The notes under the pieces: model-generated
What the model was told of the DNA's origin: nothing
Seen by the model: only the letters and a program-made list of their open reading frames with translations
The model's database searches: none
Assembly (NCBI GenBank): GCA_002269645.1
Contig: NIVC01002234.1
Span: forward strand, 45,702-109,701
Direction of reading: 5' to 3'
Source: Macrostomum lignano
Lineage: Eukaryota
Length of the DNA stretch: 64,000 nucleotides
Shown: in pieces, positions 18,701 to 59,400 of the stretch
Layout of the letters: every line of letters starts with the position of its first letter
How positions within the stretch are numbered: position 1 is the first letter of the stretch
Program-made: the position numbers and the translations under genes

Positions 18701-20831
18701 AAGAAGTCAATCCTGTTAGACAAGAAGTCAACCCTGTTAGACAAGAAGTCAATCCTGTTAGACAAGAAGTCGCCCTAGCCATAGGCGCACACGAAGCTAT
18801 TAGGTTAATTTATTCCGTAAGTCAACAACCCCAGGTAACGCAAAAATTGTCAAGGACCTGCATTATCATGTATTTACAAAGTGATTTAGTATGCAGAAAA
18901 TCTCAATTTACAGCCAATTTAACCCCGAGGTCCGGCGCCCGGCAACTCAATCGGAACAAGTGGCGCAGCACACGCGGTTGCAGCCGGTCAAAAAACTAAG
19001 AGCAGACAGGCAGACAGATATTCGGAGGCAGAACATTAGCTAAACTAAATATTGCTTCAGCAGCATGGGAGGGTAAACCAAGCACAGCAGTGAGACTAAA
19101 CAGAAAGAAGGAACTCTATGAAGACCCGGTGGGACTGCAAAAAAAGTCATCCAAAGGTATATTAGGTCTTCAATATTTTCTAGTTCTTTCAAGCACAGAG
19201 CCAAACGTCTGAGAGAGAGGGCATCAGCTTTGAGTCGAGTTTGTTTAACCAGCTGCTCGAGCCACTACAGCAAAACAAATACCACAAATACGAGTGTAGA
19301 GAGTCCAGCTCGGTTCCAGCACGCCAAAGAAGCAATTAAAATTGAACTCTAGGGAATTAAAACCCCAGTCTGATTGAAGTATACATAGAGAAACAACGTT
19401 GACTTTGAAAGCAAATCTCTGTGTAAACACGAATTTAAGAATGGTGTAGAATCTCGAATACTGGCCAGAAACTTAATAAAAGACAATTGACTTTTCACTC
19501 TGATTATTTAGCATCAATTATTATGGAAAAGTCACCGGGGTTATCAAGAATAGCTGCTTTAAGCCATGGCAGCTAGCAGTATGGTTGTTTTTTCAAGAAA
19601 TTGATAAATAATCAGGCCGAAAATAACGTTCGTCTCGGATGTCTTGGTGGTTGTCACCTTTAGATAGGGTGTCTAGAGATGCGCTCTAGATAGGATGTCT
19701 AGAGATGCACTATAGATAGGGTGTCTAGAGATGCACTATAGATAGGGTGTCTAGAGATGCGCTCTAGATAGGATGTCTAGAGATGCACTATAGATAGGGT
19801 GTCTAGAGATGCGCTGTAGATAGGGTGTCTAGAGATGCACTATAGATAGGGTGTCTAGAGATGCGCTCTAGATAGGGTGTCTAGAGATGCACTGTAGATA
19901 GGGTGTCTAGGGATGCGCTATAGATAGGGTGTCTAGAGATGCGCTATAGATTGGGTGTCTAGAGATGCGCTATAGATTGGGTGTCTAGAGATGCGCTATA
20001 GATAGGGTGTCTAGAGATGCGCTGTAGATAGGGTGTCTAGAGATGCGCTGTAGTAGTGTCTAGAGATGTGGTTATAGCTTAGTGGTTAGAGCGTCGGACT
20101 CACGACGGAAGGGTCGGGGGTTCGATCCCTGACCCAACCGGAATAATTGTGTCCTTGAGCAAGACACAGCTCTGCATTGCTTCAGTTCACCCAGCTGTAA
20201 AATGGGTGCCAGCATTAGCCTTCAGATGCGCCGCGCAATAGCTGCGGCTGAGCTGTCGGTTGCACATCTGCCCATTGGGGCAGGTGTAATCAATTATTAT
20301 TATTATTAATTTAGAGTCTTTAGAGTCTACATGTAAAGGTGTCCTAGAAGGGTATCTATAGATCTGCTAGGGTAATCTAGAGGTGTGCTGGGGTCTGTAT
20401 CAGTTTCAACATCTTCAGAGGCGTGCTCAAGTTCCTATAGAAGCATCAAGAAGCGCACCGGCCATCATGCCTACCTTCTCAATATAACCGGCCAACCGTT
20501 CGTTCAACTCCTGCATGTCTCTCTTCTCCTTCTCCCGTCCAGTCAGCATGCTGGACACGTCGGCAGCCACCGCGGCGCCGCTGCGACCTCCGCCGCCGCC
20601 AGAGAAGCTTCGACTAATGTTGACGCTGCGCATCGTCGAGGAGGCATCAAGAAGGTCTCGAGCCGCTGCAACGCCCGGCAAAGTCCTGTTGATCACCACA
20701 GTTTTGGGCGAAGCGATCGGACCGCGGAAGCCCAAAGAGCTCCCGCCGCTGGCGCCCGAAGTTTGCACGTTGTAGCGAGTGGTCTTCACGGTTGTCATGC
20801 TCTGGGCGTTGTTTGACGATGAAGTGCTCAT
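10552..20831 (-). CDS. Cytoplasmic intermediate filament protein (protostome type: long coil 1b plus lamin tail domain)
   Basis: Exons read by eye with GT-AG and consistent phases: 20831-20475, 14714-14503, 13928-13742, 13667-13572, 13246-12738, 12588-12491, [12377-12366 micro-exon], 12280-12156, 11814-11698, 10823-10707, 10596-10552. Rod motifs are ELNERLAGYIEKVRFLEAQN and LSLELEIHAYRKLLEGEE. LTD motifs are GNVSIQECSPDGKFVLLEN, DIGGWKL and WGVG. It ends TVYSAN* with no CaaX or obvious NLS, so it is not a lamin. The exon 3 acceptor (AAG at 13929-13931) is the least certain junction. Confidence 0.92.
11036..11510. repeat. 23-bp intronic minisatellite (GTAATTCCTCTAGATGGACTTGG)
   Basis: Tandem units in the IF intron, with degenerate flanks from about 10900. 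Confidence 0.9.
11876..12110. repeat. 55-bp intronic tandem repeat (~4 copies)
   Basis: GCTAAGAT recurs at 11893, 11948, 12003 and 12058. Confidence 0.88.
12690..12733. repeat. (AACT)n microsatellite adjacent to the IF exon 5 donor
   Basis: About 10 tandem AACT units. Confidence 0.85.
14045..14410. repeat. 46-bp intronic tandem repeat (GATTCCAGCTCTCTTATTGGTCAGGGAGCTTTTGGGGTGGTGGGTG)
   Basis: About 8 imperfect copies in IF intron 2. Confidence 0.88.
14812..18771. repeat. 20/21-bp minisatellite (CTGTTAGACAAGAAGTCAACC and variants), ~4 kb
   Basis: Continuous array in IF intron 1. The ORFs LTGLTSC/SNRVDFL are repeat translations. Confidence 0.96.
19661..20067. repeat. 26-bp minisatellite (TAGATAGGGTGTCTAGAGATGCGCTA)
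   Basis: Period of 26 (19687, 19713). It abuts the 5' end of a SINE. Confidence 0.9.
20068..20310 (+). mobile_element. tRNA-derived CORE-type SINE, copy 1 (internal deletion)
   Basis: A box TAGCTTAGTGG, B box GGTTCGATCCC, core TGTGTCCTTGAGCAAGACAC...CTGTAAAATGGG, and an (ATT)n tail. Homologous to the copies at 40364, 43112 and 47482. Confidence 0.85.
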
Positions 20832-25202: not shown

Positions 25203-27430
<2,228 letters not shown>

Positions 27431-30235: not shown

Positions 30236-30484
30236 ATCCAAGCATGGTTATAATTCTTTTAAGAAAGTTGATCAACCTTTAAATAGTGGTTAACACTATT
30301 GCTAACTATCAATACTTTAATTAAAATATTACTTTTAAGCAGCTATTATTGTTATAGTAATTTGTAATCATATCAAAAAGCATAATTAGTTATTTTTTAA
30401 ACAACACAAAAAACAAATAGGCCTACTATCTAAATTACATACCAAAGTTGCTATGCAAATAATAAGAGACTACTAAATTTGAAA

Positions 30485-34624: not shown

Positions 34625-35042
34625 TCGATCCCCATCCTGATCCCCATCCTGATCCAATTCTGATCTTCACCCTTATCCCCATCCTGATCCCTCTCTGATC
34701 CCCATCCTGATCCCCATCCTGATCCAATTCTGATCTTCACCCTTATCCCCATCCTGATCCCTCTCTGATTCTCATCCTGATCCCATCACCTATTATAGCT
34801 GATCTCCATACTGATCCACATCCTAATCGACCATCCTGATCGCCATCCTGATCTCCAATCTGATCCCCATCCTGATCCTCACCCTGATCCAAATCCTGAT
34901 CCCCATCCTGATACTCATCCTGATACTTATCCTGATCCTGATCCTGATCCTGATCCCCATCCTGATACTTATCCTGATCTCCATCCTGATCTCCATCCTG
35001 ATCCTCATCCTGATCTTCCTCCTGATCCCCATTCTGATCACA
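34625..35042 (+). repeat. (ATCCTGATCCCC)n 12-bp satellite, copy A
   Basis: Degenerate 6/12-bp period; same family as 35925 and 38326. Confidence 0.85.
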
Positions 35043-35924: not shown

Positions 35925-36120
35925 ATGGGGATCAGGTAAGGAATCAAGGTACGTACATGTAAGGGATCATTATGGAGATTAGGATGGGGATTGGGATGGG
36001 GATCAGGATGGGGATTGGGATGGGGATCAGGATGGAGATCAGTATGGGGAGCAGGATGGGGATTAGGATAGGGATCAGGGTAAGGGATCAGGATAGGTAT
36101 CGGGGTTCGGATCAGGCTAG
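35925..36120 (-). repeat. (ATCCTGATCCCC)n satellite, inverted copy B
   Basis: GGGGATCAGGAT units on +. Confidence 0.8.
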
Positions 36121-38325: not shown

Positions 38326-39050
38326 TTAACCCTGATCCAAATCGTGATCCCCATCCTGATCCCCATCCTTATTCCCATCCTGATCCTCACCTGATCCCCA
38401 TCCTTATCCCCATCCGGATCTTCACCCTGATCCCAATCCTGGTCCCCATCCTGATCCCCATCCTGATCCCCATCCTGATCCCCATCCCGATCTCCATCCT
38501 GGTCCCCATCCTGATCCCCATCCCGATCTCCATCCTGGTCCCCATCCTGGTCCCCATCCGGATCCATCCTGATCCCCATCCTGATCGCCATCCTGATCCC
38601 CATCCTGATCCCATCCTGATCCCCATCCTGATCCCCATCCTGATCCCCATCCTGATCCCCATCCTGATCCCCATCCTGATCTCCATCCTGATTCCCATTC
38701 TGATCTCCATCCTGATCCCCATCCTGATCTCCATCCTGATTCCCATTCTGATTCCTACGCTGATCCCCATCCTGATCCCCATCCTGATCCCCATCCCGAT
38801 CTCCATCCTGGTCCCCATCCTGATCCCCATCCTAATCCCCATCCGGATCCCCATCCTGATCCCCATCCTGATCCCCATCCTGATCCCCATCCTGATCCCC
38901 ATCTTGATCCCCATCCTGATCCCCATCCTGATCCCCATCCTGATCCCCATCCTGATCCCCATCCTGATCCCCATCCTGATCCCCATCCTGATCCCCATCC
39001 TGATTCCCATTCTGATTCCTACGCTGATCCCCATACCTCCATTCTGATCC
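38326..39050 (+). repeat. (ATCCTGATCCCC)n 12-bp satellite, copy C
   Basis: Long homogeneous run. The IPIL/GIRM ORFs are repeat translations. Confidence 0.93.
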
Positions 39051-39459: not shown

Positions 39460-40363
39460 TTTTAATCGCTTTTTATCAAAGATTTGTCTACGGACAGTAA
39501 AATTATTTTTATATAAAACTCATACGAGCTATATCTATGTTTTAGTTACAGCTTTGAGCATTTCCAGTGCAGAGAAACTTCATATCGCAACCCTATGTAC
39601 ATTAGATGAATAAGAGTGTAAGTGTACGCAGTGGGCGGTGTACACTTATCTTCACGGCAGCAGGGCGTGCTTCAGGTGCAATGTTCGTTTAAATACTTTC
39701 GTCTGGCCTTGACGATGCATGAAATTTCCTGGAAATTTCGTCAGTTATTTTATTCTAGAATTTTCTGCGATGCAACCACTCTAAAGATAGGAACAGTATA
39801 AATAGGCGGTAAATTCTTGCACAGCAAAGCTTGTACCAGAGTTTGTCTTCTCCAAGTGACAATGCTACAAATTCTGGGTAAGTTGGACACTATTTTAACT
39901 GTCTGGATAATATTTGGTCAATTTAGGTAAATTACGACATCAGGTCCAAAGCAATTTATATGGCTTATTTCAAACAGTTGAGTCTGATGTTGATTATTAT
40001 TGCAAATTCTCTCGTGAACGCTTATAGGAAAATATCTAAATTAAATTTGTTTAAGGTTTGAAATGTCACATGTTGAAGCATGTTGCATCAAGGTTACTTT
40101 CGCATCTCCGGTCACCTTCTGCCTATGATCATTGAACACGCACTGAGTGGTCTGAGCCGCCAAATCTTGAGATTCTCAGAGGGGATGGTTAGATCAAGGT
40201 TAGAGTTAGAGTGAGGCGACGTTGAACTCAAGCGCTGTTGATGGTCGTAGAATTTGAGCAGATTTTCAGAGCATACAGACGTCATCAATGCTTAGTTAGG
40301 CCTTTTAATTTGCTTGAACAAATCTTGCTTGCTTTGTAGCGTTTCTTCCTTTGTTGGTTTGTA

Positions 40364-40660
40364 GGGGGTTGCAGCCTAGTGGTGAGAGCGTCGGACGCAC
40401 GACTGGAAGGTCGTGGGTTCGATTCCTTATCCCACTGGAACAATTTGTGTCCTTGAGCAGGACACTTATCCCCATCCCCGATCCCCATCCTTTCCCCCAG
40501 ATCACTCAGCTGTAAAATGGGTGCCAGCATTAGCTGGGGTAATTGAGGGTGTGTGTGGCGACCTCCCAGTCCTTGGACTGAGCTGGACTGAGCTCGGTTG
40601 AGCTGTCTGTTGCACATCTGCCTAAATGGGGCAGGTGTAATCAATTATTTTTTTATTTAT
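40364..40660 (+). mobile_element. tRNA-derived CORE-type SINE, copy 2
   Basis: A box CAGCCTAGTGG, B box GGTTCGATTCC, core GTGTCCTTGAGCAGGACACTT...CTGTAAAATGGG, and 3' end GGGGCAGGTGTAATCAATTATT. Confidence 0.85.
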
Positions 40661-43111: not shown

Positions 43112-43416
43112 TAATTATAATAATAATTGATTACACCTGCCCCATTTGGGCAGATGTGCAACCGACAGCTCAGCCGCAGCTATTGAGCCGCGCATCTGAA
43201 GGCTGCGTACGGCTGTTCAGTCCAAGGACTGGGGGGTCGCCACACAGCCTCAATTACCCCAGCTAATGCTGGCACCCATTTTACAGCTGGGTGAACTGAA
43301 GCAATGCAGAGTTAAGTGTCTTGCTCAAGGACACAAATTGTTCCAGTGGGGTCGATAATCGAACCCCCGACCTTCAAGTCGTGAATCCGACGCTTTAACC
43401 ACTATACTACAACCCC
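43112..43416 (-). mobile_element. tRNA-derived CORE-type SINE, copy 3 (most complete)
   Basis: Minus strand: GGGGTTGTAGTATAGTGGTTAAAGCGTCGG...GGTTCGATT...TGTGTCCTTGAGCAAGACACTTAACTCTGCATTGCTTCAGTTCACCCAGCTGTAAAATGGG...GGGGCAGGTGTAATCAATTATTATT. Confidence 0.88.
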
Positions 43417-45796
43417 TACTAGGCTACAACCCCTATACCACAACCCCTACTAGGCTACAACCCCTACTAGGCTACAACCCTACTAGGCTACAACCCCTAC
43501 TAGGCTACAACCCCTACTAGGCTACAACCCCTACTAGGCTACAACCCCTATACCACAACCCCTACTAGGCTACAACCCCTACTAGGCTACAACCCTACTA
43601 GGCTACAACCCCTACTAGGCTACAACCCCTACTAGGCTACAACCCCTACTAGGCTACAACCCCTACTAGGCTACAACCCCTACTAGGCTACAACCCCTAC
43701 TAGGCTACAACCCCTACTAGGCTACAACCCCTACTAGGCTACAACCCCTACTAGGCTACAACCCCTACTAGGCTACAACCCCTACTAGGCTACAACCCCT
43801 ACTAGGCTACAACCCCTACTAGGCTACAACCCCTACTAGGCTACAACCCCTACTAGGCTACAACCCCTACTAGGCTACAACCCCTACTAGGCTACAACCC
43901 CTACTAGGCTACAACCCCTACTAGGCTACAACCCCTACTAGGCTACAACCCCTACTAGGCTACAACCCCTACTGGCTACAACCCCTACTAGGCTACAACC
44001 CCTACTAGGCTACAACCCCTACTAGGCTACAACCCCTACTAGGCTACAACCCCTACTAGGCTACAACCCCTACTGGGCTACAACCCCTACTAGGCTACAA
44101 CCCCTACTAGGCTACAACCCCTACTAGGCTACAACCCCTACTAGGCTACAACCCCTACTGGCTACAACCCCTACTAGGCTACAACCCCTACTAGGCTACA
44201 ACCCCTACTAGGCTACAACCCCTACTAGGCTACAACCCCTACTAGGCTACAACCCCTACTGGGCTACAACCCCTACTAGGCTACAACCCCTACTAGGCTA
44301 CAACCCCTACTAGGCTACAACCCCTACTAGGCTACAACCCCTACTAGGCTACAACCCCTACTGGGCTACAACCCCTACTAGGCTACAACCCCTACTAGGC
44401 TACAACCCCTACTAGGCTACAACCCCTACTAGGCTACAACCCCTACTAGGCTACAACCCCTACTGGCTACAACCCCTACTAGGCTACAACCCCTACTAGG
44501 CTACAACCCCTACTAGGCTACAACCCCTACTGGCTACAACCCCTACTAGGCTACAACCCCTACTAGGCTACAACCCCTACTAGGCTACAACCCCTACTAG
44601 GCTACAACCCCTACTAGGCTACAACCCCTACTAGGCTACAACCCCTACTAGGCTACAACCCCTACTAGGCTACAACCCCTACTAGGCTACAACCCCTACT
44701 AGGCTACAACCCCTACTAGGCTACAACCCCTACTAGGCTACAACCCCTACTAGGCTACAACCCCTACTAGGCTACAACCCCTACTAGGCTACAACCCCTA
44801 CTAGGCTACAACCCCTACTGGCTACAACCCCTACTAGGCTACAACCCCTACTAGGCTACAACCCCTACTAGGCTACAACCCCTACTAGGCTACAACCCCT
44901 ACTGGGCTACAACCCCTACTAGGCTACAACCCCTACTAGGCTACAACCCCTACTAGGCTACAACCCCTACTAGGCTACAACCCCTACTAGGCTACAACCC
45001 CTACTGGGCTACAACCCCTACTAGGCTACAACCCCTACTAGGCTACAACCCCTACTAGGCTACAACCCCTACTAGGCTACAACCCCTACTAGGCTACAAC
45101 CCCTACTGGCTACAACCCCTACTAGGCTACAACCCCTACTAGGCTACAACCCCTACTAGGCTACAACCCCTACTAGGCTACAACCCCTACTAGGCTACAA
45201 CCCCTACTAGGCTACAACCCCTACTAGGCTACAACCCCTACTAGGCTACAACCCCTACTAGGCTACAACCCCTACTGGGCTACAACCCCTACTAGGCTAC
45301 AACCCCTACTAGGCTACAACCCCTACTAGGCTACAACCCCTACTAGGCTACAACCCCTACTAGGCTACAACCCCTACTAGGCTACAACCCCTACTAGGCT
45401 ACAACCCCTACTAGGCTACAACCCCTACTAGGCTACAACCCCTACTGGCTACAACCCCTACTAGGCTACAACCCCTACTAGGCTACAACCCCTACTAGGC
45501 TACAACCCCTACTGGCTACAACCCCTACTAGGCTACAACCCCTACTAGGCTACAACCCCTACTAGGCTACAACCCCTACTAGGCTACAACCCCTACTAGG
45601 CTACAACCCCTACTAGGCTACAACCCCTACTGGCTACAACCCCTACTAGGCTACAACCCCTACTAGGCTACAACCCCTACTAGGCTACAACCCTACTGGC
45701 TACAACCCCTACTAGGCTACAACCCCTACTAGGCTACAACCCCTACTAGGCTACAACCCCTACTAGGCTACAACCCCTACTAGGCTACAACCCCTA
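43417..45796. repeat. 17-bp minisatellite (CAACCCCTACTAGGCTA), ~140 units
   Basis: Very homogeneous and contiguous with the 5' end of SINE copy 3. Confidence 0.96.
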
Positions 45797-46779
45797 GTCT
45801 AGTAGGGCAAAGCAACTGTCCAGTAAGCAGTTTGGCAAAACAGCCGGAGAAATGTTTTAAACAAGCAGCAAGCAGTGAGCAGTTTTAAAATTGCTTTAAG
45901 CTTAACTCTTCGATACATTTAGATGCATAAAAATCAAAATTATTTATAAATTTGCACAATTAGTACACAGTTAGGACTTTTTATTAGCTATAGAACTTAA
46001 TGCGTAGCGAGATGCTACTAAAAGTAGAACATAGCTGTTTTACTCGCTGATTTATTTATCTCGCAATATCTCGTGCTACTGTTAAGCAAGTTAAGCAGCT
46101 AACAGAATAAATTTTTGGCTATTACACTATAGAAATAGGACCAGTGTACCACGAGTCCTAGCCACGAAAATATTGTTTAGAAATAAACTGCAAATACTAA
46201 GTCCCTCATTATCAGTGTAAATTTTTGTAAAAATCTGAGTCAACAGTCTTACACGCTAGGAAAGCATGACTTGCTTTGAGTACTTCTTACAAGATAGCTA
46301 CTGGTTTTCGTGAGTGTTCTTATGCTTATCAGTAAAGAAGTTATTCTAGGAATAGCACTTCCGAACAGTGGTCAGTTTGAGCTCACTGTTCAAGAACTGT
46401 AGATACCAGCTCAAGCAGCAGAAACTTGAGAAACGCGATACACTACTTTGTTCACTCGTGGTCTCGACGTTTGCTTCAATTTTCGCCTGGGAATTTTCTT
46501 AGGTCAATACTTTCTGGTGCAATATGTCAGGAGAGCAGAATCATGGGGTCAGAGCAGTTCTGCCGTAATAACGCGTCTGACTTTTGCGACTCGATCACTG
46601 GTTTGATTCCGCTCGCGGCCACCTTCATTTAGGCTTTTGTACATGACGATTTGGCTGGTGGGTTGTCGTGCGATTCACAGCGATGAGGGCCAACCCCGAG
46701 GCACAGAGAGTGTACATGCCTGATGATTAGGAAGCCAGGGCCGCTGTACACTCTGTGGGAGCGTGTATACGAGCGTACG

Positions 46780-47120
46780 AGTGCGTAAACCAAAGCGCCC
46801 AGTGCCAGATCGACAGGCTGGTCGAGGTGGCATCGAGCGTCGGTCTAGTTGTCAACATGCTGAAGACCGAGGTGCTGACTGTGCCGGCCGACATCCCAGC
46901 GGACCTGACGTGCCGCGGCGCAGACGGGCAGACGACCAAGCTCGCACGCTGCCAGCGGTTAACCTACCTCGGCGGTCTGGTGCCCCACGTGGACCTCCGG
47001 TGGCGCAGAGGAGTTGCCTGGGTGGCCTTTCGTTCGATCCGAGCCGTCCTCCAGTCCGAAGCGCTGCCCGACCGCCAAAGGTCTCGGCTGGGGCAGGCGG
47101 TGGCCGAAACGTCACCTTGC
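46780..47120 (+). mobile_element. RTE-like LINE reverse-transcriptase C-terminal fragment
   Basis: VGLVVNMLKTEVL...LTYLGG...RRGVAWVAFRSIRAVLQSEALPD overlaps and aligns with RCRGLAWATFNSMRTILHSAALPD of the 30485 element. Confidence 0.78.
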
Positions 47121-47481
47121 TGGGCGCGCTTAGGAGTCAGTGGAATGAGCAGAATTGCCTTACCGCTAATCATGGAACAATTTTGCAGAAGGCGTTGCAC
47201 CAGAGTGCCCACAGCCGTTCTGCAATAATAGGACAGAATCATGCTAACATTCAACTTGCATCATTCAGTAGCCAAGTACCATTCCAAGTAGCCTCTGTAC
47301 TTAACACTTGGTTATGAACCGACTGTTTTGTGATATTGTGTTTTATATGTATTAGTGAAAACTTGGCAAAATCTAAATGTGTCGGGTCCCTGCTGGAGAT
47401 GTAGAAAAATATCTATTCTGCACAGTTGTCATGTATCCATTCAAATCTTTCATTTTTGTTCATTTATCCTCATTTATCCTA

Positions 47482-47581
47482 GATTACACCTGCTCTAACT
47501 GGCAGATGTGCAACCGACAGCTCAACCGCAGCTATTGCGCGGCGCACCTGAAAGCTGCGTACGGCTATTCAGTCCAAGGAC
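47482..47581 (-). mobile_element. CORE-type SINE, 3' fragment (copy 4)
   Basis: GATTACACCTGC...GCAGATGTGCAACCGACAGCTCAACCGCAGCTATTG...CAGTCCAAGGAC matches 43130-43230. Confidence 0.8.
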
Positions 47582-49134: not shown

Positions 49135-50391
49135 ATGCTACATTCGAGCTATTTGCACTACGCCCAGTTGGCCGCGGCCCTCTTCGTGGTCGCCATGCTC
49201 GCTGTGCTGCTCACGGCCTACATCCTCGCCATCATTTGGGCTAGGGTGTACTTCTACCGGCGAGTTAACTTCAGTCCAGACATGCTGGAGGCTGGACTTC
49301 CAGGCGTTTCAATCATCAAACCGCTCGTTGGGATCGATCGGAATGTGTACGCAAATCTGGAGACCTTCTTCACGCTGCAGTACCCCAAATATGAGCTGCT
49401 GTTCTGCCTGGAGTCCGACTCCGACTCCGCCCGAATGGTGATAGAGACTCTCATGGAGAAGTACCCGGCTGTAGAGGCTCGACTGCTGTGCTCACCAATC
49501 TTGTGCGGCGTGAATCCGAAGATCAACAACATGATGCAAGGCTACCAGACTGCGAAGCATCAGCTGGTGCTTATCTCCGATAGCGGTGTCAAAATGCGAC
49601 CAGAGGCCCTCGCAGACATGGTTTGGTGCATCAACCAGAAGGACGTCGGCCTGGTGCATCAGATGCCATTTGTAGATCAACGACCGGGCTTCCGCAGTCT
49701 TGTACATTCCGCCTACTTTGGCTGCTCGCACGCCAAGTCCTATATTAGCGCCAACTGTTTAGGCATCACCTGCTGCACCGGGATGTCCTGCTTATTCCGC
49801 AGGCAGGTTGTGGACGAGCTTCCCGGCGGCCTGGCCTACTTCGGGCGCTACTTGGCCGAGGATTTCTTCTTAGCGCAGCACATCCAGTCAAGAGGCTACC
49901 GAGTGTCCGTGTCGCACTATCCGGCTCTACAGGATGGCACAGGCGAGGTGAGACTCCTGCAACGAAGATTGATTCGCTGGGCCCAGCTCCGCACCGCCAT
50001 GGTGCCGCACATCGTTCTACTGGAGCTCATCGCCGAGTGCTTAGCGGCCGGCCTGCTAGGCGCGTGGGCTCTGCCGTTCCTCTTCCCCAGCTTGAATCCC
50101 TGCGCCTGCTTCCTGATTCACTGCCTGACGTGGCTCCTAGCCGACTACGCCATGCTGCGCAGCTGCATGGACACCGCTGGCGTTGACGAGAAGCCGCAAT
50201 TCGGCCGCGTTGAATTCGTTTGCGCCTGGCTGCTCTGCGTCGGCATGACGCCGTTGAATCTGCTGGTCTCGCTTAGTCGCTCCGAGATTGTCTGGCGAAA
50301 TCGGCGCTTCCGGCTGAGCTGGGGCGGCGCCACCCACGAAGTGTCGTCGCAGCAGAAGTTGACTAACGCTAGCAGTAAACCGACGCTTTGA
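49135..50391 (+). CDS. UGCG: Ceramide glucosyltransferase (glucosylceramide synthase, GT21), intronless, 418 aa
   Basis: N-terminal TM segment, then GVSIIKPL, NPKINN, ISDSG, GLVHQMPF, TGMSCLFR, LAEDFF, an RxxRW motif (RLIRW), C-terminal hydrophobic segments and IVWR. Confidence 0.95.
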   Translation: MLHSSYLHYAQLAAALFVVAMLAVLLTAYILAIIWARVYFYRRVNFSPDMLEAGLPGVSIIKPLVGIDRNVYANLETFFTLQYPKYELLFCLESDSDSARMVIETLMEKYPAVEARLLCSPILCGVNPKINNMMQGYQTAKHQLVLISDSGVKMRPEALADMVWCINQKDVGLVHQMPFVDQRPGFRSLVHSAYFGCSHAKSYISANCLGITCCTGMSCLFRRQVVDELPGGLAYFGRYLAEDFFLAQHIQSRGYRVSVSHYPALQDGTGEVRLLQRRLIRWAQLRTAMVPHIVLLELIAECLAAGLLGAWALPFLFPSLNPCACFLIHCLTWLLADYAMLRSCMDTAGVDEKPQFGRVEFVCAWLLCVGMTPLNLLVSLSRSEIVWRNRRFRLSWGGATHEVSSQQKLTNASSKPTL

Positions 50392-52019
50392 TGATAGCTG
50401 CAAGTAAGCTATATTTTCCAAGGGAAAAGCAGGACACAGTAGCAGCACTCTTGGTCTCCCGGTGTTGAAATCGATTCAAACACTCCTTGAACCCCTAGCT
50501 GATGCGCATGACAATGTGGCATTTTGTTCTTCATTATTTCGTAGTTTGACCGTCTTAAATTGTTTTTTTTAAATCTTAATAGCCTTTATTCGGATAGGTT
50601 AGAATTGAATAACCAAGCAGATATACGAGCTAACTTTGGCTCAGTGCCAGTCAAATTTGGCCTCCACTGCGGCTGTGTCAGCACAATCTGTCCTCTCATT
50701 CATTCTATTTCAAAGCAGACTATTCACCAGTTTCCTCTAGCTAGACGTAAAATCCTTTGACGCGTCTTTTCTTCTATTAGCTGCTATTTTTATACGCTCG
50801 TTAAATCTGAAAGACCCCCATCTTGCCGGTTTGTTTAAAATTGTTGCGTAGCTCGTATCATAAATGTCATTTTTACCTACGAGTTCGCGTACCACCTGTC
50901 TCTTATGAACTGGCAGGGTAAGCCGGTATGCGCTGCATGTATACACTTTATTTGCACAATTAATTGTATTGCGCGACGCCCGCAGCTGCGTATATCTGCT
51001 CGAATTGCCCCCATGTTTCCTTCCAAAGTATTTCCTTCCAACATAGTCAGATTCAGTAATCTTCAGTACTTTATTACTGCTGCACCTGGTTTTAATTTGC
51101 ACGCCCTCTTGTAGCCCTTTGTTCTTGATTTGACATGCATTCTCCGAACTCAAGTGCTTGCCTGCTAATTGCCCTGACTTGTCTAGTCGCTGCAACAATA
51201 AAACTTATTAATGTATGCCCCAGCCAAAAGCTGGAAATCAGGTAGGCTTGTTCCTTTGCTTCCGTTTGCTTTATTTAAAGGAGCCTTATTAAACCTGTAA
51301 TTCGGACTTTTGAATGCTAAGAAACGGGCCTAGCTCAAAGAGAGTAAAAGAGACACAGAGAGATCTGGAACTCTGCTCGGGACCGTTCCGTTTGATTTGA
51401 ACACCGCTGTGCAAGCAGGGCTAGAGCTGGATTGGCATGAGTTCTTCGAAACAAGCGCTGCTGTAAGTCGCCCTAGCTGTCTCGTGTCTCCTGTCCAAAT
51501 ACCCCCATAGCTATCAGTTCAGCTCTTGTTTAACCAAGTGCGCACTTGAAGTATTTGGAAGGAAACTTTGCATTCGCTGCATATAAAAGCCTCTCGATTA
51601 GGTCTGTTTTGGGTAGTTCAATTCTGTGTGTGTGGGTGGGTGTGCAAATGCCTGAATTGGAATTCGCAGCGGATGAGAAAAAGTGAATATGGCTCATTTT
51701 TTTGGCAACGTTTTGTTCTGAATGCATACGCTCGTAAACGCAGTTATGTGCGCGAACCTGCGTTTAACTGGATTTTATCGCGCTACCAGGTACAGACAGT
51801 GAAATTCCGGGCGGAGGCAGCGCATTTGCAGTTCAAATATCACGTGTTTGCATTGTGGCAGCTAATTTAACAGGAATTATTCTGTAAAATTCAGGGTAGC
51901 TGCAGCAGCTGGGACATACTTGAAGTGTATTAATAAAGTACGTCGTACATGTAGTGCAGCTCTGCAAGATTGAAGGGAAAAATAGACGAGGGGTAGTAGA
52001 ATAGAACAGCAAATTAGGG

Positions 52020-53200
52020 TAGTGAAGCAGCAGATCAGGGTAGTAGAATAGTAGATAAAGGTAGTAGAACAGTCGATTAAGGTAGTAGAACTGTAGATCA
52101 GAGTAGTAGAACAGTAGATCAGGGTAGTAGAACAGCAGATCAGAGTAGTAGAACAGTAGATCAGGGTAGTAGAACAGCAGATCAGAGTAGTAGAACAGTA
52201 GATCAGGGTAGTAGAACTGTAGATCAGGGTAGTAGAACAGTAGATCAGGGTAGTAGAATAGTAGATCAGGGCAGTAGAACTGTAGATCAGAGTAGTAGAA
52301 CAGTAGATCAGAGTAGTAGAACAGTAGATCAGGGCATTAGAACAGTAGATCAGGGCAGTAGAACTGTAGATCAGAGTAGTAGAACAGTAGATCAGAGTAG
52401 TAGAACAGTAGATCAGGGCATTAGAACAGTAGATCAGGGTAGTAGAACAGCAGATCAGAGTAGTAGAACAGTAGATCAGGGTAGTAGAACTGTAGATCAG
52501 GGTAGTAGAACAGTAGATCAGGGTAGTAGAACAGTAGATCAGGGTAGTAGAACAGCAGATCAGAGTAGTAGAACAGTAGATCAGGGTAGTAGAACTGTAG
52601 ATCAGGGTAGTAGAACAGTAGATCAGGGTAGTAGAACTGTAGATCAGGGCAGTAGAACAGTGGATCAGGGCAGTAGAACTGTAGATCAGAGTAGTAGAAC
52701 AGTAGATCAGGGTAGTAGAACTGTAGATCAGGGTAGTAGAACAGTAGATCAGGGTAGTAGAACTGTAGATCAGGGCAGTAGAACAGTGGATCAGGGCAGT
52801 AGAACTGTAGATCAGAGTAGTAGAACAGTAGATCAGGGCAGTAGAACTGTAGATCAGAGTAGTAGAACAGTAGATCAGAGTAGTAGAACAGTAGATCAGG
52901 GCAGTAGAACAGTAGATCAGGGCAGTAGAACAGTAGATCAGGGCAATAGAACTGTAGATCAGAGTAGTAGAACAGTAGATCAGAGTAGTAGAACAGTAGA
53001 TCAGGGCATTAGAACAGTAGATCAGGGCAGTAGAACTGTAGATCAGAGTAGTAGAACTGTAGATCAGGGTAGTAGAACAGCAGATCAGGGTAGTAGAACA
53101 ATAGACTAGTGTAGTAGAACAGCAGATTTGGGTAGTAGAACAGCAGATTTGGGTAGTAGAACAGCAGATTTTGGTAGTAGAACAGCAGATTTGGGTAGTA
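52020..53200. repeat. 21-bp minisatellite (AGTAGAACAGTAGATCAGGGT)
   Basis: Lies between the 3' ends of two convergent genes. The SRTVDQG ORF is a repeat translation. Confidence 0.93.
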
Positions 53201-53455
53201 GAGCAATACAGAGCACAAAAAACGATTAAATCACTGATGACTCATAGACCCAAAGACCAATTAAAGTGATGAAACTTTATCGACCTTCATTACAAGCTTT
53301 GAAATCGACTTTTATTTCGGAAATTTTATTTAACCAACAAATCCGCTTGAGTGCATATTTGTGTCACAATTGAAAATTGAATCAGAAGCATTAAATTCAT
53401 AATCAAATCAGTATTCTAGTGTAAAAAGTACAAACTGCAACTTCAATGGTGAGCA

Positions 53456-56400
53456 TCAGGTGCTTGGCTTTCCGCTGCCACTGAAGAAGCTCAGCTGAAA
53501 TACGAGAGGGCGGTTGTTGCAGTAGCAAAGTACGTTAACTGGAGCTCAGAGTGCTGCCTCACTCACCACTGTGTCGCTCAGTGCGTTGAAGCTCGATCGC
53601 CGCGATGGGGAAGTCTCTTCCAGGACCCGTTCCTAGAATTGCATTGTTTACGATATGATAAATAAGAAAACTATTAGTAGATGACAAAATATACCTGATA
53701 AGAGCGTTGAGCGATTGAGCAATTATTATTATTAATAATACTAGCGATCGATGGGGCGTAGCAGGGAGGAAGCAAAGGGGGACCGCGGCCCCCAAAAAGC
53801 TAGTAGGAACATTGGCGCCACTTTGCCCCCCCCCTGGTGCTGGTGCCCCTGATGCTGGCGCCCCTGGTGCTAAAGCCCCTGGTGCTAAAGCCCCTGGTGC
53901 TAAAGCCCCTGGTGCTAAAGCCCCTGGTGCTAAAGCCTTTGGTGCTAAAGCCCCTGGTGCTAAAGCCTCTGGTGCTAAAGCCCCTGGTGCTAAAGCCTCT
54001 GGTGCTAAAGCCCCTGGTGCTAAAGCCCCTGGTGCTAAAGCCTTTGGTGCTAAAGCCCCTGGTGCTAAAGCCCCTGGTGCTAAAGCCTTTGGTGCTAAAG
54101 CCCCTGGTGCTAAAGCCCCTGGTGCTAAAGCCCCTGGTGCTAAAGCCCCTGGTGCTAAAGCCCCTGGTGCTAAAGCCCCTGGTACTAAAGCCCCTGGTGC
54201 TAAAGCCCCTGGTGCTAAAGCCCCTGGTGCTAAAGCCCCTGGTACAAAAGCCCCTGGTGCTAAAGCTCTCAAAATCCTGTCTTGGCCCCTGTTGCCGTCC
54301 TAACAAAACGATTCACAATGGCAAAATATTAAGAGATTTTTTATCCATTACTATTAGTAGACTTAAAGCGAAACTGACTCCGATATTATTAAAAATTGGA
54401 ATTGTCGTCTCAGTAACTTGTGAGTTACACGGTAAACGCATCAGTACAATCTATTCAGTGTGTTGTAAACTATCATTAATCATTAATAATTAATAAAATA
54501 AAAATTACTGGATAATCGCTGGAAGTTGAAACGTTGTCTTTAGCGGCTAAGATTTTAGACGGAGTGCAGACTCTGAGAGAAAAACTTCTTTAAGACCAAA
54601 AAGCATTGAAACGACTGACTCAAATTTGCACTTTTTACCAACTGAGGTCCAACAAAATAAAACGCCTCTGCCTTTTCGGCTTTTGCAAATTTAGCTAATC
54701 TAATTAATGTCCTTTCCTCGGCAAGACCATCAAAGAGTCGAGGTTCCTTTCATGCCGCCAGACAAATCTTATCTAGAAGTGTACAGTTAGGCTTTTTTAA
54801 TTAGATTGACCTCGAACTAAGGAGCAGGATTTTCTTATGCCGCAAAAAGTCAAATAAAGTATTTGTTTTGCCAAATATTTTGGTCTGGGCTTAGGAAACA
54901 GAATGTTTTTGCAGACTGTGGCTAACTTTTAATTCGATTGAAAATCATTAGGATTCAGAAATATGAGTACATGTACGAGTTTATCAAGCTGTCACTTGTC
55001 AATTAAAATCAGTTTTAATCGATTTGTAAACTTTTTTTCTCATTTTTATGGCTCGTAAAACTAAAATTCTTTAAAACAAAGCAAACAACGGGTGTCTACT
55101 CCACGACAGGGTGTCTACTCTAAGACCAGGGTGTCTACTCTAAGACCAGGGTGTCTACTCCAAGACCAGGGTGTCTACTCCAAGACCAGGGTGTCTACTC
55201 TAAGACCAGGGTGTCTACTCCAAGACCAGGGTGTCTACTCTAAGACCAGGGTGTCTACTCCAAGACCAGGGTGTCTACTCCAAGGCAGATATAACTACTT
55301 CAAGACTTGAGGTGTCTGCTTGAAGAAAAATGCATTGACTTAAAAGACAAATATATGTAATCTACGAAAGGTACAGCACACCTTTATCGAGAGTGTTTTA
55401 CGCTACAGGAATTCATTAGAACCAATGAATTGGTTCATCAGCACCCTGTGATGATGCTTCCAGACAGTTGATAGAATGCCACTTTAAACACTGGCCTAAT
55501 CGTCACAAAAGAAAAACCCTGCAACGCCTCACCGTCAGCGGATTTTGGCCGGACGGCCGTCTACTGGACGGCTTTGAGCCGGGCGGCGTCGGTGTCGGGA
55601 TTCGGCAATAGTCAGCCGCTGTCAGGTTTGACGCCATCAAGGCGTGCGCGCTGCCGCCAGTAGCACCGCTGCTGCCCATGCCGGCGCTGCCCATGACATT
55701 CGCGGCGCTGTTCGCTGCAACGCTATGCCGTCTGGTCTGCTGCAGGGCTGTTGGCAGCGACAGAGTGAAACTTCGGTTGGCATCCTCCTGGGGAAACGGA
55801 TTTTTTGGTGGCAAGGGCAGGCGATGAACTCCAATTTGGGAGGGACTCAGTTGTTCAAAAGTTGTTCAACAGTGCAAGCGAGCGCGAGAGAAAAAAAGAG
55901 AAATGGGCTGGAAACAATGCGCGACAAACGACGGCTTAATTTCATCCAGTCAGCCTAAATCCTGTCTGTCAGTATCTAAAGTTGCTGTCTAAAAAAACAA
56001 TCAAAATCGCTCTTTTTTGAAGAGAAACCGAGGAATTGCAACGGACGTTTTCGTTACCTGTTAGCCTATCAGCTTACTCATAAGCTTTGCAACATTGCAA
56101 AATTGAGATTTAAAAAATGCAATACTTAGTCTGAGTCACTCTTAAAGACTTGCGCAAACAATTTGTTACATTGAACGTACACAAGAGGAAATGTTCAAGG
56201 CGATTGGGATGCGTGTACTTCTGTGTCAAAGCGGTCTTTTTCGTGCTTTTAGCTGCTTGTTTTAAAGCGATTGTCATGCTTCAATCCAAGGTTCGGAATC
56301 AGAATTTGAAACCTAACCAGAGCTTGGACGATCCAAAGAAGAAGTGCCACGCGAGACAATGGTTACAGTTACAAACATTTAGCAAAATGCAGCTGAATGC

Positions 56401-59400
56401 GGTGCGAGCAATGCGTTTGTTAATTTTTAGGCGGCCTACATCGTATGACGGAGACTGATGCTGCGAATTGTGAGTCAGAGAACTGACTCCTGTGTGCCAG
56501 TTGTGATGCACCTGGTGAAATTGGTGGTTCTGATGGGGTACAGGAGACAAATACAGAGCCGTATGCGTGTTGATCGGTGGTGCTGGAGCTGCTTCTGAGG
56601 ATATCGTCGAGAACTCGCCGCCGCCACTACCGCTGGCTCCGCCGATGATGACAGGCACGGAGAGCGAGTGCTGCGGCGGCAGGAAGCAGCGGCGCCGACG
56701 TCTGTTGCTGCTGCTGCCGCTGCTGGACATTGACGACTGTTGTTGGTGGTGCGGCGACATCGGCGCCGATGTGGTCGACAGCGGAGAGGCCGGACTCGGC
56801 GGAGCAAGGGAGTTGGCGGTCGAATGGGCACTTCGGGGCGGCGGTTGCTAAAAAAATCAATGCGCATGGCGTGGGTGGCGAAATATGGGCCGGGACAGAA
56901 GCTATTTAGCAATAACATGATTATATTTAGCGAATTTTCCTTGCTAAACTAAACGAAATAATGTTAGAAGGCATCACAAAGACAAAACCCCCCGTCAACA
57001 GACACTGCTGCTGAAAGACAAACATTGGCTCGCTAATTAAATGTGTACAGATTCTTATTTAATTAAAGCCAGCCGTGAATAAATCAAGCAGCCGGAGACT
57101 CAGTAAACTGAGATCCGTCACGAAAAGCCAATTTTGGTCAAACGGATGCGAAAAAAAATTGCAAAGTAAATTCTAGCTGACTTAGCAAATTCTCCAATTT
57201 CAAATTTCGCACGTCGCCTCACCCACACAATTGCTGCTCTAAGGACCGTTGCCATTGACAACCCGGGCACGCATTTGATTAAAAGGGATGGAGGTAGAAG
57301 TCAGTCTACAACAGGTGGGAGACTGAATTCAGTTTAATTCAAGGCACACAAAAGAGCAAGAACTGGGCTGGCTACGCGAGTTATGGGGGCAACTTACGGC
57401 TCAGTTGTTTAGTCACGGCCGGGGCCCAATCGAAAAATATTGATTTCGGGCCTCATGCATTCAAATTCTGGGCGTCTTTTTTGTATTGGCATTAAAAAAC
57501 TCAACAATTACCGTGTGATAGAGGGCCTAGGCTACGGTAAAACAATGAGAATCTCATCGAGTCCTCAGCTTACCATGACGTTGTTTTGCGTGGAAATCAC
57601 AGAGACAAAAAACTGGCATCGCTAAATGAGCAACAGAGAAAATGAAACAATGGGCCTCCATCTGGCTCCACAATTGCAAGCTGGTTCGAATAGAGAAAAT
57701 AAAACGGAAAAGCCTTTCAGCTAAGTAAAAAATAATTTCCTTTGTTCTCTTTAAGACGAGACAATATAGAAGACGTTATAATCATACATTTTTTTAATCA
57801 AGCCAGTATTTTAACTTCTAACAAAAATCTGAAAAAAATTTTTCTAAGAGTAGCCTTGGGTGCTTGATTCTTCGAAATTAATTGTAATTCTACGAGTATT
57901 AATGGGGTCGTGCTATAAAGCTGTCGTAGCGTAAGTTGAATCGTACGTCGGAACTTTTACACTGCGGAGATAGGGGCTAAGAACGATCTTATCTTACAAT
58001 GGCTTTGTACTCGTAGAACGGGGCCAGTACTAACTTTAGTCACTTGATGCTTTGAAGTAAAAAAAGTATTAAAAAACTATTGAAGATTCGTATTTTCCTT
58101 TGTAGCTCAGTTAGTTTTTAATGGGCTTTGGACTAATTAAGGCGATATTCGACTCCAGTAAGCAGTCATGCCCCTGAGCACGCAAACGCACACAGGTACG
58201 TCAGGCAGACACACACTCACACATGGCATGCACACCCCACCCACTGTGCCTCGGTGTCTGGCGCAGAATCGCAAGACAGGCCCAATATCTGGGTACTTAT
58301 TTAGGATGGAACCTGTAGCTTTAATTGGATACGAGCGATTTCTTTAGCAGAAGATGCCAGAGCCTTATACAGTCGCATACGATAGGCCAGAACTTACCGC
58401 GGAGAGGCCCGCCGCGCCGCTGATGTCAATGACGGAGCCCTTCCTGGGACTGGTGCGCAAATTGAACGACGGACTGCTGCCAGTCTTGCTGATGCGTCGC
58501 ACAAATTCCTGACCTGCGTGGTGATGAGACGATAGGGCGGCTCGAATGAATTCTTCAATCTGAAACATAATGCGCGCAGGCGAATGTATCGCGGGTAGGG
58601 ATCACAAAGCAGGATTTAGAGGCGGTCGAAGCCGGGTCTTATTAGATCAAATCTACGGGACAAAGGAGCTCACGTTTCAAGCACGTAGAATTTTTGTAAT
58701 AATGCAGCTAGCTAATTGAACACATCCGTTTGGAACGTGTCTCAGTGTCTGATTTCATTAATATTGAGATTTTGTCCATCTTGTCCACGATAGACTAACC
58801 TACGGCTTATTCCCGAACTTTGAAATGTCTTAAACTAGCTTGAATCGTGGCACTTCAAAATACGAGCGCAGGTCCTTCGATTATTCTTTTATGGTCGTCT
58901 TGTCATAATACGAGTATCTTGATTATTCACTTGCATCGACTTCAGACCCATTTAATCTGAGTTCTTTATTCTACGCATGGCTATGATTCCCTCCTTTTGT
59001 ATTTAACTGTCCAGACGTAAAGCTTTTGGCTACTTTTGATCGATTTTGTCGTTCCATTAATGAGTGCATGCGTCCCTAGTTCTGATCCCATTGGTTCATT
59101 GCATTGGCAGTGACATGGGCTCAGAGTCCTTGCTGTGGATTTAGCCAATGAGTTTTAGTCGGCAGGGAGGTACATATGAACGAGGTGCCCATCGGAAATA
59201 GAAGACTGCTTGCATCATTTGCCAGTTTCAACTAGTTTATCAGGAAGTTGCAAAGATCTGCAAATCTGCTTGGAGAGATTCAGTGAATAGGGAACAAAAC
59301 TCGTAGCAATGAGGCCTGCTCTGATAGTGGTACTGCTTGCCATGTGCGCTCTCTGTTTCGAGATTGGATCGGCTCGTGGTGCGGCTTCTACTGCTTCACT

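What the first reader, a model, noticed from the sequence alone, without database searches (positions are those of the whole stretch)
43112..45796. A 2.4-kb minisatellite born from the A-box end of a SINE
Seen: on the minus strand the unit is TAGGGGTTGTAGCCTAG. This is nearly the 5' head of the SINE family (copy 2 begins GTAGGGGGTTGCAGCCTAGTGG), and the array runs seamlessly into copy 3. Each of the ~140 units carries TAGCCTAGTAG, one base from the A box TAGCCTAGTGG, upstream of a single B box. Inference: this is direct evidence that a SINE 5' terminus seeded a satellite (e.g. repeated RT template jumps or slippage). The array might also provide multiple Pol III start or TFIIIC sites.
Basis: partly seen in the sequence, partly recalled or inferred. 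Interest (0 to 1): 0.75.

Follow-up and report, generated by a model that had tools for sequence, protein, structure and literature searches.

The report
SINE-head minisatellite in a flatworm
A 2.4-kb run of 141 copies of a 17-base unit in the flatworm Macrostomum lignano was copied from the first 16-17 bases of the neighbouring SINE retrotransposon, a clean but ordinary example of a mobile element seeding a minisatellite.

Summary
Window 43419-45796 (minus strand) carries 141 head-to-tail units of TAGGGGTTGTAGCCTAG. The array runs in register into the tRNA-like head of a roughly 307-bp SINE (43418-43112).

Outside the array, only one site in 61.6 kb lies within 3 edits of the unit. That site is the head of an independent SINE copy (40362-40379), which matches the unit at 15 of 16 bases.

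The window is from Macrostomum lignano assembly Mlig_3_7. A second, 96-98% identical copy of the locus in that assembly has the same SINE and the same array boundaries, but only about 38 units and different unit variants. The array is therefore real, predates the duplication of the locus, and keeps changing in length.

The best explanation is an in-place tandem duplication of the SINE's first 16-17 bases, then growth by slippage and unequal exchange. A 20-unit block duplicated inside the array supports unequal exchange. Whether reverse-transcriptase template switching made the first duplication cannot be decided from this data.

I found no support for a Pol III or TFIIIC role. The units lack a B box and change a conserved A-box G.

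SINE- and Alu-derived satellites are already described, and 35% of this window is minisatellite. I rate it a new member of a known kind, of modest interest.

The parts
43419..45796 (-). Minisatellite of 141 units, period 17, consensus TAGGGGTTGTAGCCTAG. The unit corresponds to TA plus tRNA-like positions 1-15 of the SINE head.
   Evidence: TRF. Unit census and variant map. 127 matches against 0.01 expected.
43112..43418 (-). Resident SINE copy 3, full length: tRNA-like head, CORE-like central domain, 3' tail region and an (ATT)n end.
   Evidence: Sequence. BLAST against the other copies. Four-way alignment.
43347..43416 (-). tRNA-related head of copy 3. Model position 1 falls on the GGGG that also starts the repeated unit.
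   Evidence: Rfam tRNA RF00005, 23.2 bits, E = 0.12. This is below the gathering score of 29. ARAGORN finds no tRNA.
43399..43409 (-). A-box-like 11-mer TAGTATAGTGG of the resident head. The array units carry TAGCCTAGTAG instead.
   Evidence: Coordinates. Comparison with the A-box consensus TRGCNNAGTGG is from textbook knowledge.
43355..43365 (-). The only B-box-like site, GGTTCGATTAT. It is imperfect at its last two bases.
   Evidence: Coordinates. The B-box consensus GGTTCGANNCC is from textbook knowledge.
43268..43335 (-). Conserved central domain: TGTGTCCTTGAGCAAGACAC ... CAGCTGTAAAATGGGTGCCAGC.
   Evidence: Invariant among the window copies. The 20-mer is shared with 81 SINE-like metagenome contigs.
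45799..45807 (+). CTAGTAGGG, an inverted copy of the inter-unit junction, 2 nt beyond the distal end of the array. Its meaning is unknown.
   Evidence: Sequence. Conserved in the second locus copy.
40360..40659 (+). SINE copy 2, an independent insertion with no array. Its head TAGGGGGTTGCAGCCTAG is the only non-array match to the unit.
20062..20308 (+). SINE copy 1, abutted 5' by an unrelated 26-bp array (19661-20068). It serves as a control.
47482..47581 (-). 5'-truncated SINE fragment, tail region only.

Best explanation
**What it is.** A tRNA-derived SINE with a CORE-like central domain inserted, on the minus strand, in the intergenic stretch between a small gene (about 41.5-42.5 kb) and the ceramide glucosyltransferase gene (49.1 kb) of Macrostomum lignano.

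**What happened.** Steps 1-3 are inferred; step 4 is shown.
1. The first 16-17 bases of the element were duplicated in tandem where they lay. These bases are the 5' arm of the acceptor stem plus the first half of the D arm, which is most of box A.
2. That short duplication grew into a minisatellite by replication slippage and unequal exchange between misaligned units.
3. The abundant unit kept the ancestral GCCTAG. The single resident head drifted to GTATAG.
4. The array has kept expanding, contracting and homogenising independently in the two copies of the locus in the assembly.

**Function.** It is non-coding. I see no evidence that it does anything beyond being an unstable repeat.

**Shown.** Homology of the unit to SINE heads, the in-register junction, the presence and different length of the array in two locus copies, and a block duplication inside the array.

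**Inferred.** The order of events and the DNA-level mechanisms.
For: - **Array:** period 17, 141 units.
- **Unit matches SINE heads:** 15/16 against the head of independent SINE copy 2 and 16/18 against the resident head. No shuffled unit reached either score in 500 trials.
- **Specificity:** the copy 2 head is the only site within 3 edits of the unit in the remaining 61.6 kb on both strands. Expected: 0.01 sites at 2 edits or fewer.
- **Register:** the last unit continues in register into the SINE. The weak Rfam tRNA match starts exactly at the GGGG.
- **One-sided:** there is no unit-like sequence 3' of the SINE.
- **Second locus copy:** L002 (contig NIVC01001021.1, 96-98% identical flanks) has the same SINE and identical distal and proximal boundaries. 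It has about 38 units, 11 of them a private TTCTAG variant.
- **Growth by blocks:** a 20-unit pattern (units 38-57) recurs at units 76-95, and a 7-unit block is doubled next to the SINE.
- **Local copying from the head:** two 14-nt units, TAGGGGTTGTGGTA, resemble the resident head's own first 14 nt (TAGGGGTTGTAGTA followed by TAG).
- **Ancestral state:** the other heads read GCCTAG or GCTTAG at the positions where the resident head has GTATAG.
Against: - Only three full SINE copies were available, so the family consensus head is poorly defined. Whether the TA before the GGGG belongs to the element is also unsettled.
- Target-site duplications could not be recognised for any copy. The best candidate around array plus SINE (TACTAGAC / TACTTGATAC) is no better than shuffles. 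The array is therefore not formally shown to lie inside the insertion boundaries.
- The dominant unit differs from the resident head at two adjacent bases. That needs either later mutation of the head or another template.
- The rest of the genome could not be searched for the 17-mer.
Confidence: 0.8

Rival explanations
1. Retrotransposition-coupled birth. During target-primed reverse transcription, the enzyme reached the 5' end of the SINE RNA and switched back to an internal position of the same or another SINE RNA. The element would then have been inserted already carrying two or more head repeats, and DNA-level processes only enlarged the array later.
For: - The repeats sit exactly at the 5' terminus of the element and start at its first bases.
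- The unit carries GCCTAG, as in other family members, rather than the resident head's GTATAG. Copying from another SINE RNA would explain that.
- TAG occurs at both ends of the copied segment, which offers microhomology for a switch. The 14-nt variants have exactly the TAG-to-TAG spacing.
Against: - DNA slippage between the same short direct repeats predicts the same geometry.
- None of the other SINE copies available shows even a two-unit head duplication. These are two in the window and 81 related elements in metagenome contigs.
- The 38 versus 141 unit difference shows that DNA-level change is sufficient and ongoing.
- 141 consecutive jumps in one event is not credible.
Confidence: 0.12
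2. Chance or recombinational juxtaposition. A satellite with a tRNA- or SINE-like unit already existed, and the SINE inserted at, or recombined with, its edge.
For: - SINE copy 1 did insert into an older, unrelated 26-bp array, with array-like sequence on both sides.
- 35% of the window is minisatellite, so such landings are likely.
Against: - The junction is in register to the base.
- No unit-like sequence follows the SINE's 3' end.
- The 17-mer is absent from the rest of the window, from 42 kb of other M. lignano sequence and from 226 kb of metagenome contigs.
- Even then, the pre-existing satellite would itself have to be SINE-head derived.
Confidence: 0.05
3. The array is a functional platform: a battery of A boxes that recruits TFIIIC or Pol III, or gives alternative start sites for the SINE.
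For: Each unit carries TAGCCTAGTAG, one mismatch from the A-box consensus. The array lies directly upstream of a tRNA-like promoter.
Against: - From established knowledge of type 2 Pol III promoters, stable TFIIIC binding depends on box B, which the units lack.
- The mismatch removes one of the two conserved Gs that end box A.
- The resident B-box-like site is imperfect.
- Unit number differs almost four-fold between the two locus copies, and variants accumulate freely. That looks neutral.
- No expression data could be examined.
Confidence: 0.03

Closest known systems
SINE-derived satellites (sSat) of squamate reptiles (Vassetzky et al. 2023, PMC10702118)
   Same: - Tandem arrays whose unit is a portion of a tRNA-related SINE.
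- A longer terminal unit continues into the rest of the SINE up to its terminus.
- Arrays vary in length between orthologous loci and become more homogeneous as they grow.
   Different: - Here the unit is only 17 bp, and it is the extreme 5' terminus of the head.
- Only one locus is known so far, in an intergenic, gene-rich region of a flatworm. No multi-locus satellite family has been shown.
Alu-derived minisatellites and 5' partial-Alu duplications in human (Jurka and Gentles 2006; Ahmed and Liang 2012, PMC3389668)
   Same: - Minisatellites initiated inside a SINE between short direct repeats and then expanded locally.
- 23% of human minisatellites and satellites are TE-derived.
- One class has a partial element repeated at the 5' end of a full element.
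   Different: - Human examples mostly have 2-3 units, against 141 here.
- Those come from a 7SL-derived SINE, this one from a tRNA-derived SINE.
- The direct repeat available here is only TAG/TGG.
tRNA-related tandem families of amphibians (PolIII/TAN, OAX, Rana/polIII), as summarised in PMC10702118
   Same: Tandem repeats that contain tRNA-like sequence.
   Different: - Those units are 200-360 bp and include whole tRNA-like promoters.
- No parent SINE has been identified for them.
- Here the parent SINE is attached, and the unit is a fragment without box B.
5' monomer arrays of mouse L1 and the VNTR of SVA (from general knowledge)
   Same: Tandem repeats located at or near the 5' part of a non-LTR retroelement.
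   Different: - Those repeats are a family-wide feature, are carried through retrotransposition, and in L1 act as the promoter.
- Here only one of three full copies has the array, and nothing indicates that it is mobilised or functional.

Membership tests
TE-derived (SINE-derived) minisatellite | Head-to-tail tandem array of a short unit | tested here: met
   TRF gives period 17, 141.7 copies, 97% matches. Unit census.
TE-derived (SINE-derived) minisatellite | Unit homologous to a defined part of an interspersed element family | tested here: met
   15/16 identity to the head of independent copy 2. No shuffled unit reached this score in 500 trials. It is the only hit within 3 edits in 61.6 kb.
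TE-derived (SINE-derived) minisatellite | Array physically continuous, in register, with the rest of the parent element | tested here: met
   Junction sequence in the window and in the second locus copy.
Satellite family in the strict sense (many loci, concerted evolution between loci) | The same unit arrayed at multiple genomic loci | tested here: inconclusive
   The unit is absent from the rest of the window, from 42 kb of other M. lignano loci and from 81 metagenome contigs. The genome itself could not be searched.
tRNA-derived SINE with a conserved central domain (CORE-SINE type) | tRNA-related head with A and B boxes | tested here: inconclusive
   Rfam tRNA scores 23.2 bits, below the gathering score of 29. 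ARAGORN finds nothing. A-box-like and B-box-like sites are present but imperfect.
tRNA-derived SINE with a conserved central domain (CORE-SINE type) | Conserved central domain shared across distant taxa | tested here: met
   The 20-mer TGTGTCCTTGAGCARGACAC and the following ...CACCCAG..GTAAA.TGGGTACC motif recur behind tRNA-like heads in 81 metagenome contigs. Naming it CORE rests on my memory of the MIR consensus, not on a test.
tRNA-derived SINE with a conserved central domain (CORE-SINE type) | Dispersed copies, including 5'-truncated ones, with a simple-repeat tail | tested here: met
   Three full copies and one 100-bp 3' fragment, with (ATT)n-like ends.
tRNA-derived SINE with a conserved central domain (CORE-SINE type) | Target-site duplications and an identifiable partner LINE | tested here: inconclusive
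   No flank pair scored above shuffles. The partner LINE was not identified.
Functional Pol III / TFIIIC site array | A B box (the TFIIIC anchoring element) in each unit, or within about 30-60 bp of its A box | tested here: not met
   The units contain no GGTTCGANNCC-like sequence. The single B-box-like site is at 43355-43365.
Family-borne 5' repeat of a retroelement (L1 monomers, SVA VNTR type) | The repeat is present in most or many copies of the family | tested here: not met
   Copies 1 and 2 have single heads. The sample is only three copies.

The most novel reading that the evidence does not exclude
SINE 5' ends may be recurrent seeds of minisatellites in M. lignano. Tandem and simple repeats make up 15% of this genome (PMC5730564). 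The cause could be reverse-transcriptase template switching at the RNA 5' end, or a genome-specific process that amplifies G-run segments. The second idea rests on GGGT-type motifs, which are over-represented in the window's array units. If either is right, this locus would be the visible first step of a general route from retroelement termini to the species' very heavy minisatellite load.
Probability: 0.07. Interest if true: 0.6.

Novelty: new member of a known kind. Interest (0 to 1): 0.3.

Why it matters
The parent sequence of a minisatellite is rarely still attached and legible. Here three things can be read directly from the sequence: the seed (the first 16-17 nt of a SINE), the boundaries, and two independently evolved versions of the array (38 and 141 units). 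That makes the locus a convenient natural case for studying how minisatellites start and grow in a genome that is unusually prone to them. It could also serve as a hypervariable marker in M. lignano lines. It does not change what is known in principle, because SINE- and Alu-derived tandem repeats are already documented.

Tried and rejected
**Searches that found nothing useful**
- ARAGORN and Rfam at gathering threshold found no RNA gene in the window.
- Two tandem units searched in the viral contig collection gave no hit.

**Attempts to collect more M. lignano SINE copies**
- Two paralogous glucosyltransferase loci (42 kb) contained no SINE.
- A LINE reverse-transcriptase ORF and an intermediate-filament ORF used as protein queries returned only short metagenome or other-species contigs, and no M. 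lignano loci.
- One contiguous ORF (4363-5547) is not an annotated product.
I did not attempt it by other means.

**Tests on the locus that were negative or inconclusive**
- The target-site duplication search was inconclusive for all three copies.
- The array strands show no hairpin excess when folded as DNA (z = -0.5 and +1.3). A G-quadruplex-aware fold with RNA parameters did not select a quadruplex. I make no structural claim.

**An idea I rejected**
- I considered that the 26-bp array next to SINE copy 1 is also head-derived. An apparent match came only from including array bases in the comparison. A clean test gives p = 0.18-0.95.

Full report
**What is there.** Tandem Repeats Finder reports a single array at 43407-45796 with period 17, 141.7 copies and 97% matches. 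Read on the minus strand and cut at every TAGGGG, it consists of 141 units over 43419-45796 (2,378 bp):
- 120 canonical TAGGGGTTGTAGCCTAG
- 10 lacking the T of CCTAG
- 6 with CCCAG
- 3 with GGG instead of GGGG
- 2 fourteen-base units, TAGGGGTTGTGGTA

The 17-mer (2 mismatches or fewer) occurs 127 times against 0.01 expected from shuffles. The last unit is followed, in register, by TAGGGGTTGTAGTATAGTGGTTAAAGCGTCGG..., the start of a roughly 307-bp SINE that ends at 43112 in an (ATT)n-like tail. Two refinements apply. First, 43112-43418 is the SINE, not the array. Second, the resident head differs from the unit at two adjacent bases (GTATAG versus GCCTAG).

**Source and context.** The single-exon ORF at 49135-50391 is a ceramide glucosyltransferase. 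It is 99% identical to a Macrostomum lignano protein. The exact protein is encoded on contig NIVC01002234.1 of assembly GCA_002269645.1 (Mlig_3_7), and the retrieved locus is identical to window 39135-60391. The window is extremely rich in minisatellites: 35 TRF arrays cover 22.3 kb (35%), and 20 of them are 300 bp or longer. This fits the published description of the genome, in which simple and tandem repeats make up 15% and the DV1 assembly holds 180 Mb of blocks at least 95% identical (PMC5730564). An array as such is ordinary here. What is unusual is that its origin can be read.

**The SINE.** BLAST of copy 3 against the window finds two more full copies, at 20062-20308 (+) and 40360-40659 (+), and a 100-bp 5'-truncated fragment at 47482-47581 (-). 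The four-way alignment shows four parts:
- a tRNA-related head
- an invariant central block (TGTGTCCTTGAGCAAGACAC ... CAGCTGTAAAATGGGTGCCAGCATTAGC)
- a variable body with copy-specific deletions
- a conserved 3' region ending in GGTGTAATCAATTATTATT

Rfam's tRNA model matches 43347-43416 at 23.2 bits (E = 0.12), below its threshold of 29. Model position 1 falls on the GGGG. ARAGORN and Rfam at gathering threshold find nothing.

The 20-mer of the central block occurs in 81 metagenome contigs. Most show a tRNA-like head followed by the same domain. It is therefore one of the widely shared SINE central domains. From memory it resembles the CORE domain of MIR-type elements, which is a lead and not a test.

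**Is the unit derived from the SINE head?**
- Aligned against the first 60 nt of each copy, the unit matches copy 2 at 15 of 16 bases (GGGGTTGTAGCCTAGT versus GGGGTTGCAGCCTAGT).
- It matches the resident head at 16 of 18. No shuffled unit reached either score in 500 trials. The reverse complement scores at background.
- With the array and resident head masked, a fuzzy search of both strands of the remaining 61.6 kb finds exactly one site within three edits of the unit. That site is the head of copy 2, at 40362-40379, two edits away. Shuffled units give 0.01 such sites at two edits or fewer.
- The junction is in register, and no unit-like sequence lies 3' of the SINE.

Together these make homology with the head, and origin at this element, the only economical reading.

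The unit's GCCTAG agrees with copies 2 (GCCTAG) and 1 (GCTTAG). The resident GTATAG is therefore probably a later change of the single head, while the multi-copy unit preserved the older state. This is inference.

**A second copy of the locus.** The 99%-identical protein P0001 lies on contig NIVC01001021.1 (L002). Its flanks align to the window at 96-98% identity on both sides of the array. L002 shares these features with the window:
- the same SINE (97% identical), with the same GTATAG head
- the same distal flank (...TTTGCCCTACTAGAC|TAGGGG)
- the same proximal junction

Its array, however, is only 643 bp (37.7 copies). It holds 15 canonical units and 11 with a private TTCTAG change, plus several GGGATTG and AGATAGGG forms that are absent from the window. 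The window's CCAG and 14-nt variants are in turn absent from L002.

So the array is not an assembly artefact, and it arose before the two copies diverged. They may be extra-chromosome or whole-genome duplicates, or alleles. Since then the array has changed nearly four-fold in length, with independent homogenisation.

Within the window's array, the 20-unit pattern AAABAAAAADAAAAADAAAA occurs twice (units 38-57 and 76-95). A 7-unit block containing the 14-nt variant is doubled next to the SINE. This is the signature of unequal exchange of multi-unit blocks, in addition to single-unit slippage.

**Controls.**
- SINE copy 1 is also abutted at its 5' end by an array (19661-20068, 26-bp unit). That unit is not similar to any SINE head (p = 0.18-0.95). 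Degenerate copies of it continue on the 3' side of the SINE (score 40 against a shuffle maximum of 32). Copy 1 therefore inserted into an older array. Adjacency alone is not evidence of derivation.
- Copy 2 has a single head.
- None of the 81 related SINE copies in metagenome contigs has a tandem array at its head. Short-read contigs would tend to break at such arrays, so this is a weak control.
- Two further M. lignano loci (42 kb) contain neither the SINE nor the 15-mer core of the unit.

**Mechanism.** The copied segment is bounded by TAG at its start and TAG/TGG at its end. The two 14-nt units have exactly the TAG-to-TAG spacing of the resident head. Both replication slippage between short direct repeats and template switching by reverse transcriptase at the RNA 5' end predict this geometry. 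Slippage is the model proposed for Alu-derived minisatellites. Nothing in the sequence separates the two for the first duplication.

Target-site duplications would show whether the array lies inside the insertion. They are not recognisable for any copy. For the bulk of the growth, the two-copy comparison and the block duplications show DNA-level processes at work. The array strands have no unusual hairpin potential.

My estimates:

| Explanation | Probability |
|---|---|
| In-place duplication plus DNA-level expansion | about 0.8 |
| Retrotransposition-coupled first step | about 0.12 |
| Juxtaposition with a pre-existing satellite | about 0.05 |
| Functional Pol III/TFIIIC array | about 0.03 |

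**Function.** Each unit does carry TAGCCTAGTAG. This is one mismatch from TRGCNNAGTGG, but the mismatch removes one of the two conserved terminal Gs. No unit has a B box. The only B-box-like site (43355-43365, GGTTCGATTAT) is imperfect, and only the last few units lie within a normal A-B spacing of it. The promoter rules come from textbook knowledge of type 2 Pol III promoters. The free accumulation of variants and the four-fold length difference between locus copies look neutral. No expression or binding data could be examined.

**Comparison with what is known.**
- SINE-derived satellites with a terminal unit that continues into the parent SINE are described in 56 squamate genomes (PMC10702118).
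- Alu-derived minisatellites, and partial Alu repeats at the 5' end of full Alus, are described in human. There 23% of minisatellites and satellites are TE-derived (PMC3389668).
- Tandem and palindromic SINE arrangements are reported in bivalves (PMC11481361).

This locus is a further example with three particular features: a very short unit taken from the extreme 5' end, a high copy number, and a flatworm host. I classify it as a new member of a known kind, with modest interest.

**Limits.** All three large protein searches and several look-ups went on trying to obtain more M. lignano sequence, with little yield. The family consensus head, the genome-wide distribution of the 17-mer and the frequency of head duplications remain untested. 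These are the decisive next steps.

Noticed in passing
window 1-64000: 35% of the window (22.3 kb in 35 TRF arrays, 20 of them at least 300 bp, units mostly 11-36 bp) is minisatellite. The unit consensus sequences are enriched for G-runs: GGGT in 13 of 22 units (6.0 expected) and AGGGT in 7 of 22 (1.7 expected). Most are strongly G/C-skewed. Some arrays are related to each other, so the counts are not independent.
   Followed up: partly
window 40468-40500 (inside SINE copy 2); arrays 34627-35039, 35963-36116, 38331-39034: SINE copy 2 carries CCCCATCCCCGATCCCCATCCTTTCCCCC in place of about 18 nt of its central domain. This includes an exact copy (40480-40491) of the 12-mer GATCCCCATCCT, the unit of three nearby arrays. 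It is the only occurrence of that 12-mer outside those arrays. It could be a conversion patch from the array, or a second link between a SINE and a minisatellite.
   Followed up: partly
window 45799-45807 (also L002, about 6646-6654): Two bases beyond the distal end of the 17-mer array lies CTAGTAGGG, an inverted copy of the inter-unit junction. It is conserved in the second locus copy. By my arithmetic the chance of a 9-mer like this at that spot is about 2e-4 to 2e-3. It may be a trace of the initiating event or of the target site. It remains unexplained.
   Followed up: partly
window 19661-20394: SINE copy 1 (20062-20308) sits inside a 26-bp-unit array. There are 15.8 well-kept copies on its 5' side and only degenerate units on its 3' side (20340-20394). 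This suggests the array expanded on one side only after the insertion.
   Followed up: partly
L002 (NIVC01001021.1) versus window 39135-60391: The whole 21-kb block is present twice in the assembly at 94-98% identity. Other arrays also differ in length between the copies, for example the 15-bp array at window 53831-54266 and the 21-bp array at 52002-53202. All minisatellites of the block therefore appear unstable.
   Followed up: partly
window 59309-59767 (+): An ORF of 152 aa with a signal-peptide-like start and nine tandem copies of RFVQPGTYDWKKR between dibasic sites. It looks like a neuropeptide precursor built on a 36-bp DNA repeat (TRF 59432-59755).
   Followed up: no
window 25206-27424 (-), 49135-50391 (+), 12734-20831 (-): - A three-exon RhoA-like GTPase gene, 92-98% identical to human RhoA over exons 1-2 (69% over exon 3).
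- A single-exon ceramide glucosyltransferase gene.
- An intermediate-filament rod-domain gene whose introns hold several of the large arrays and SINE copy 1.
   Followed up: partly
window 30479-31030 (+), 46755-47317 (+): Degraded LINE reverse-transcriptase C-terminal fragments. Their closest database relatives (50-65% identity) are short contigs in JGI and ENA metagenomes rather than annotated M. lignano proteins. The partner LINE of the SINE was not identified.
   Followed up: partly
L047, L080, L084 (metagenome contigs MOXH01...): These contigs carry SINE copies whose tRNA-like head (…AGTGGTAGAGCGTCGGACTGCTGAACTAAGGGTCGTGGGTTCGAGCCCCACTGGAGG) and central domain resemble the M. lignano family much more closely than the other 78 hits do. 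Their source organism is unknown.
   Followed up: no
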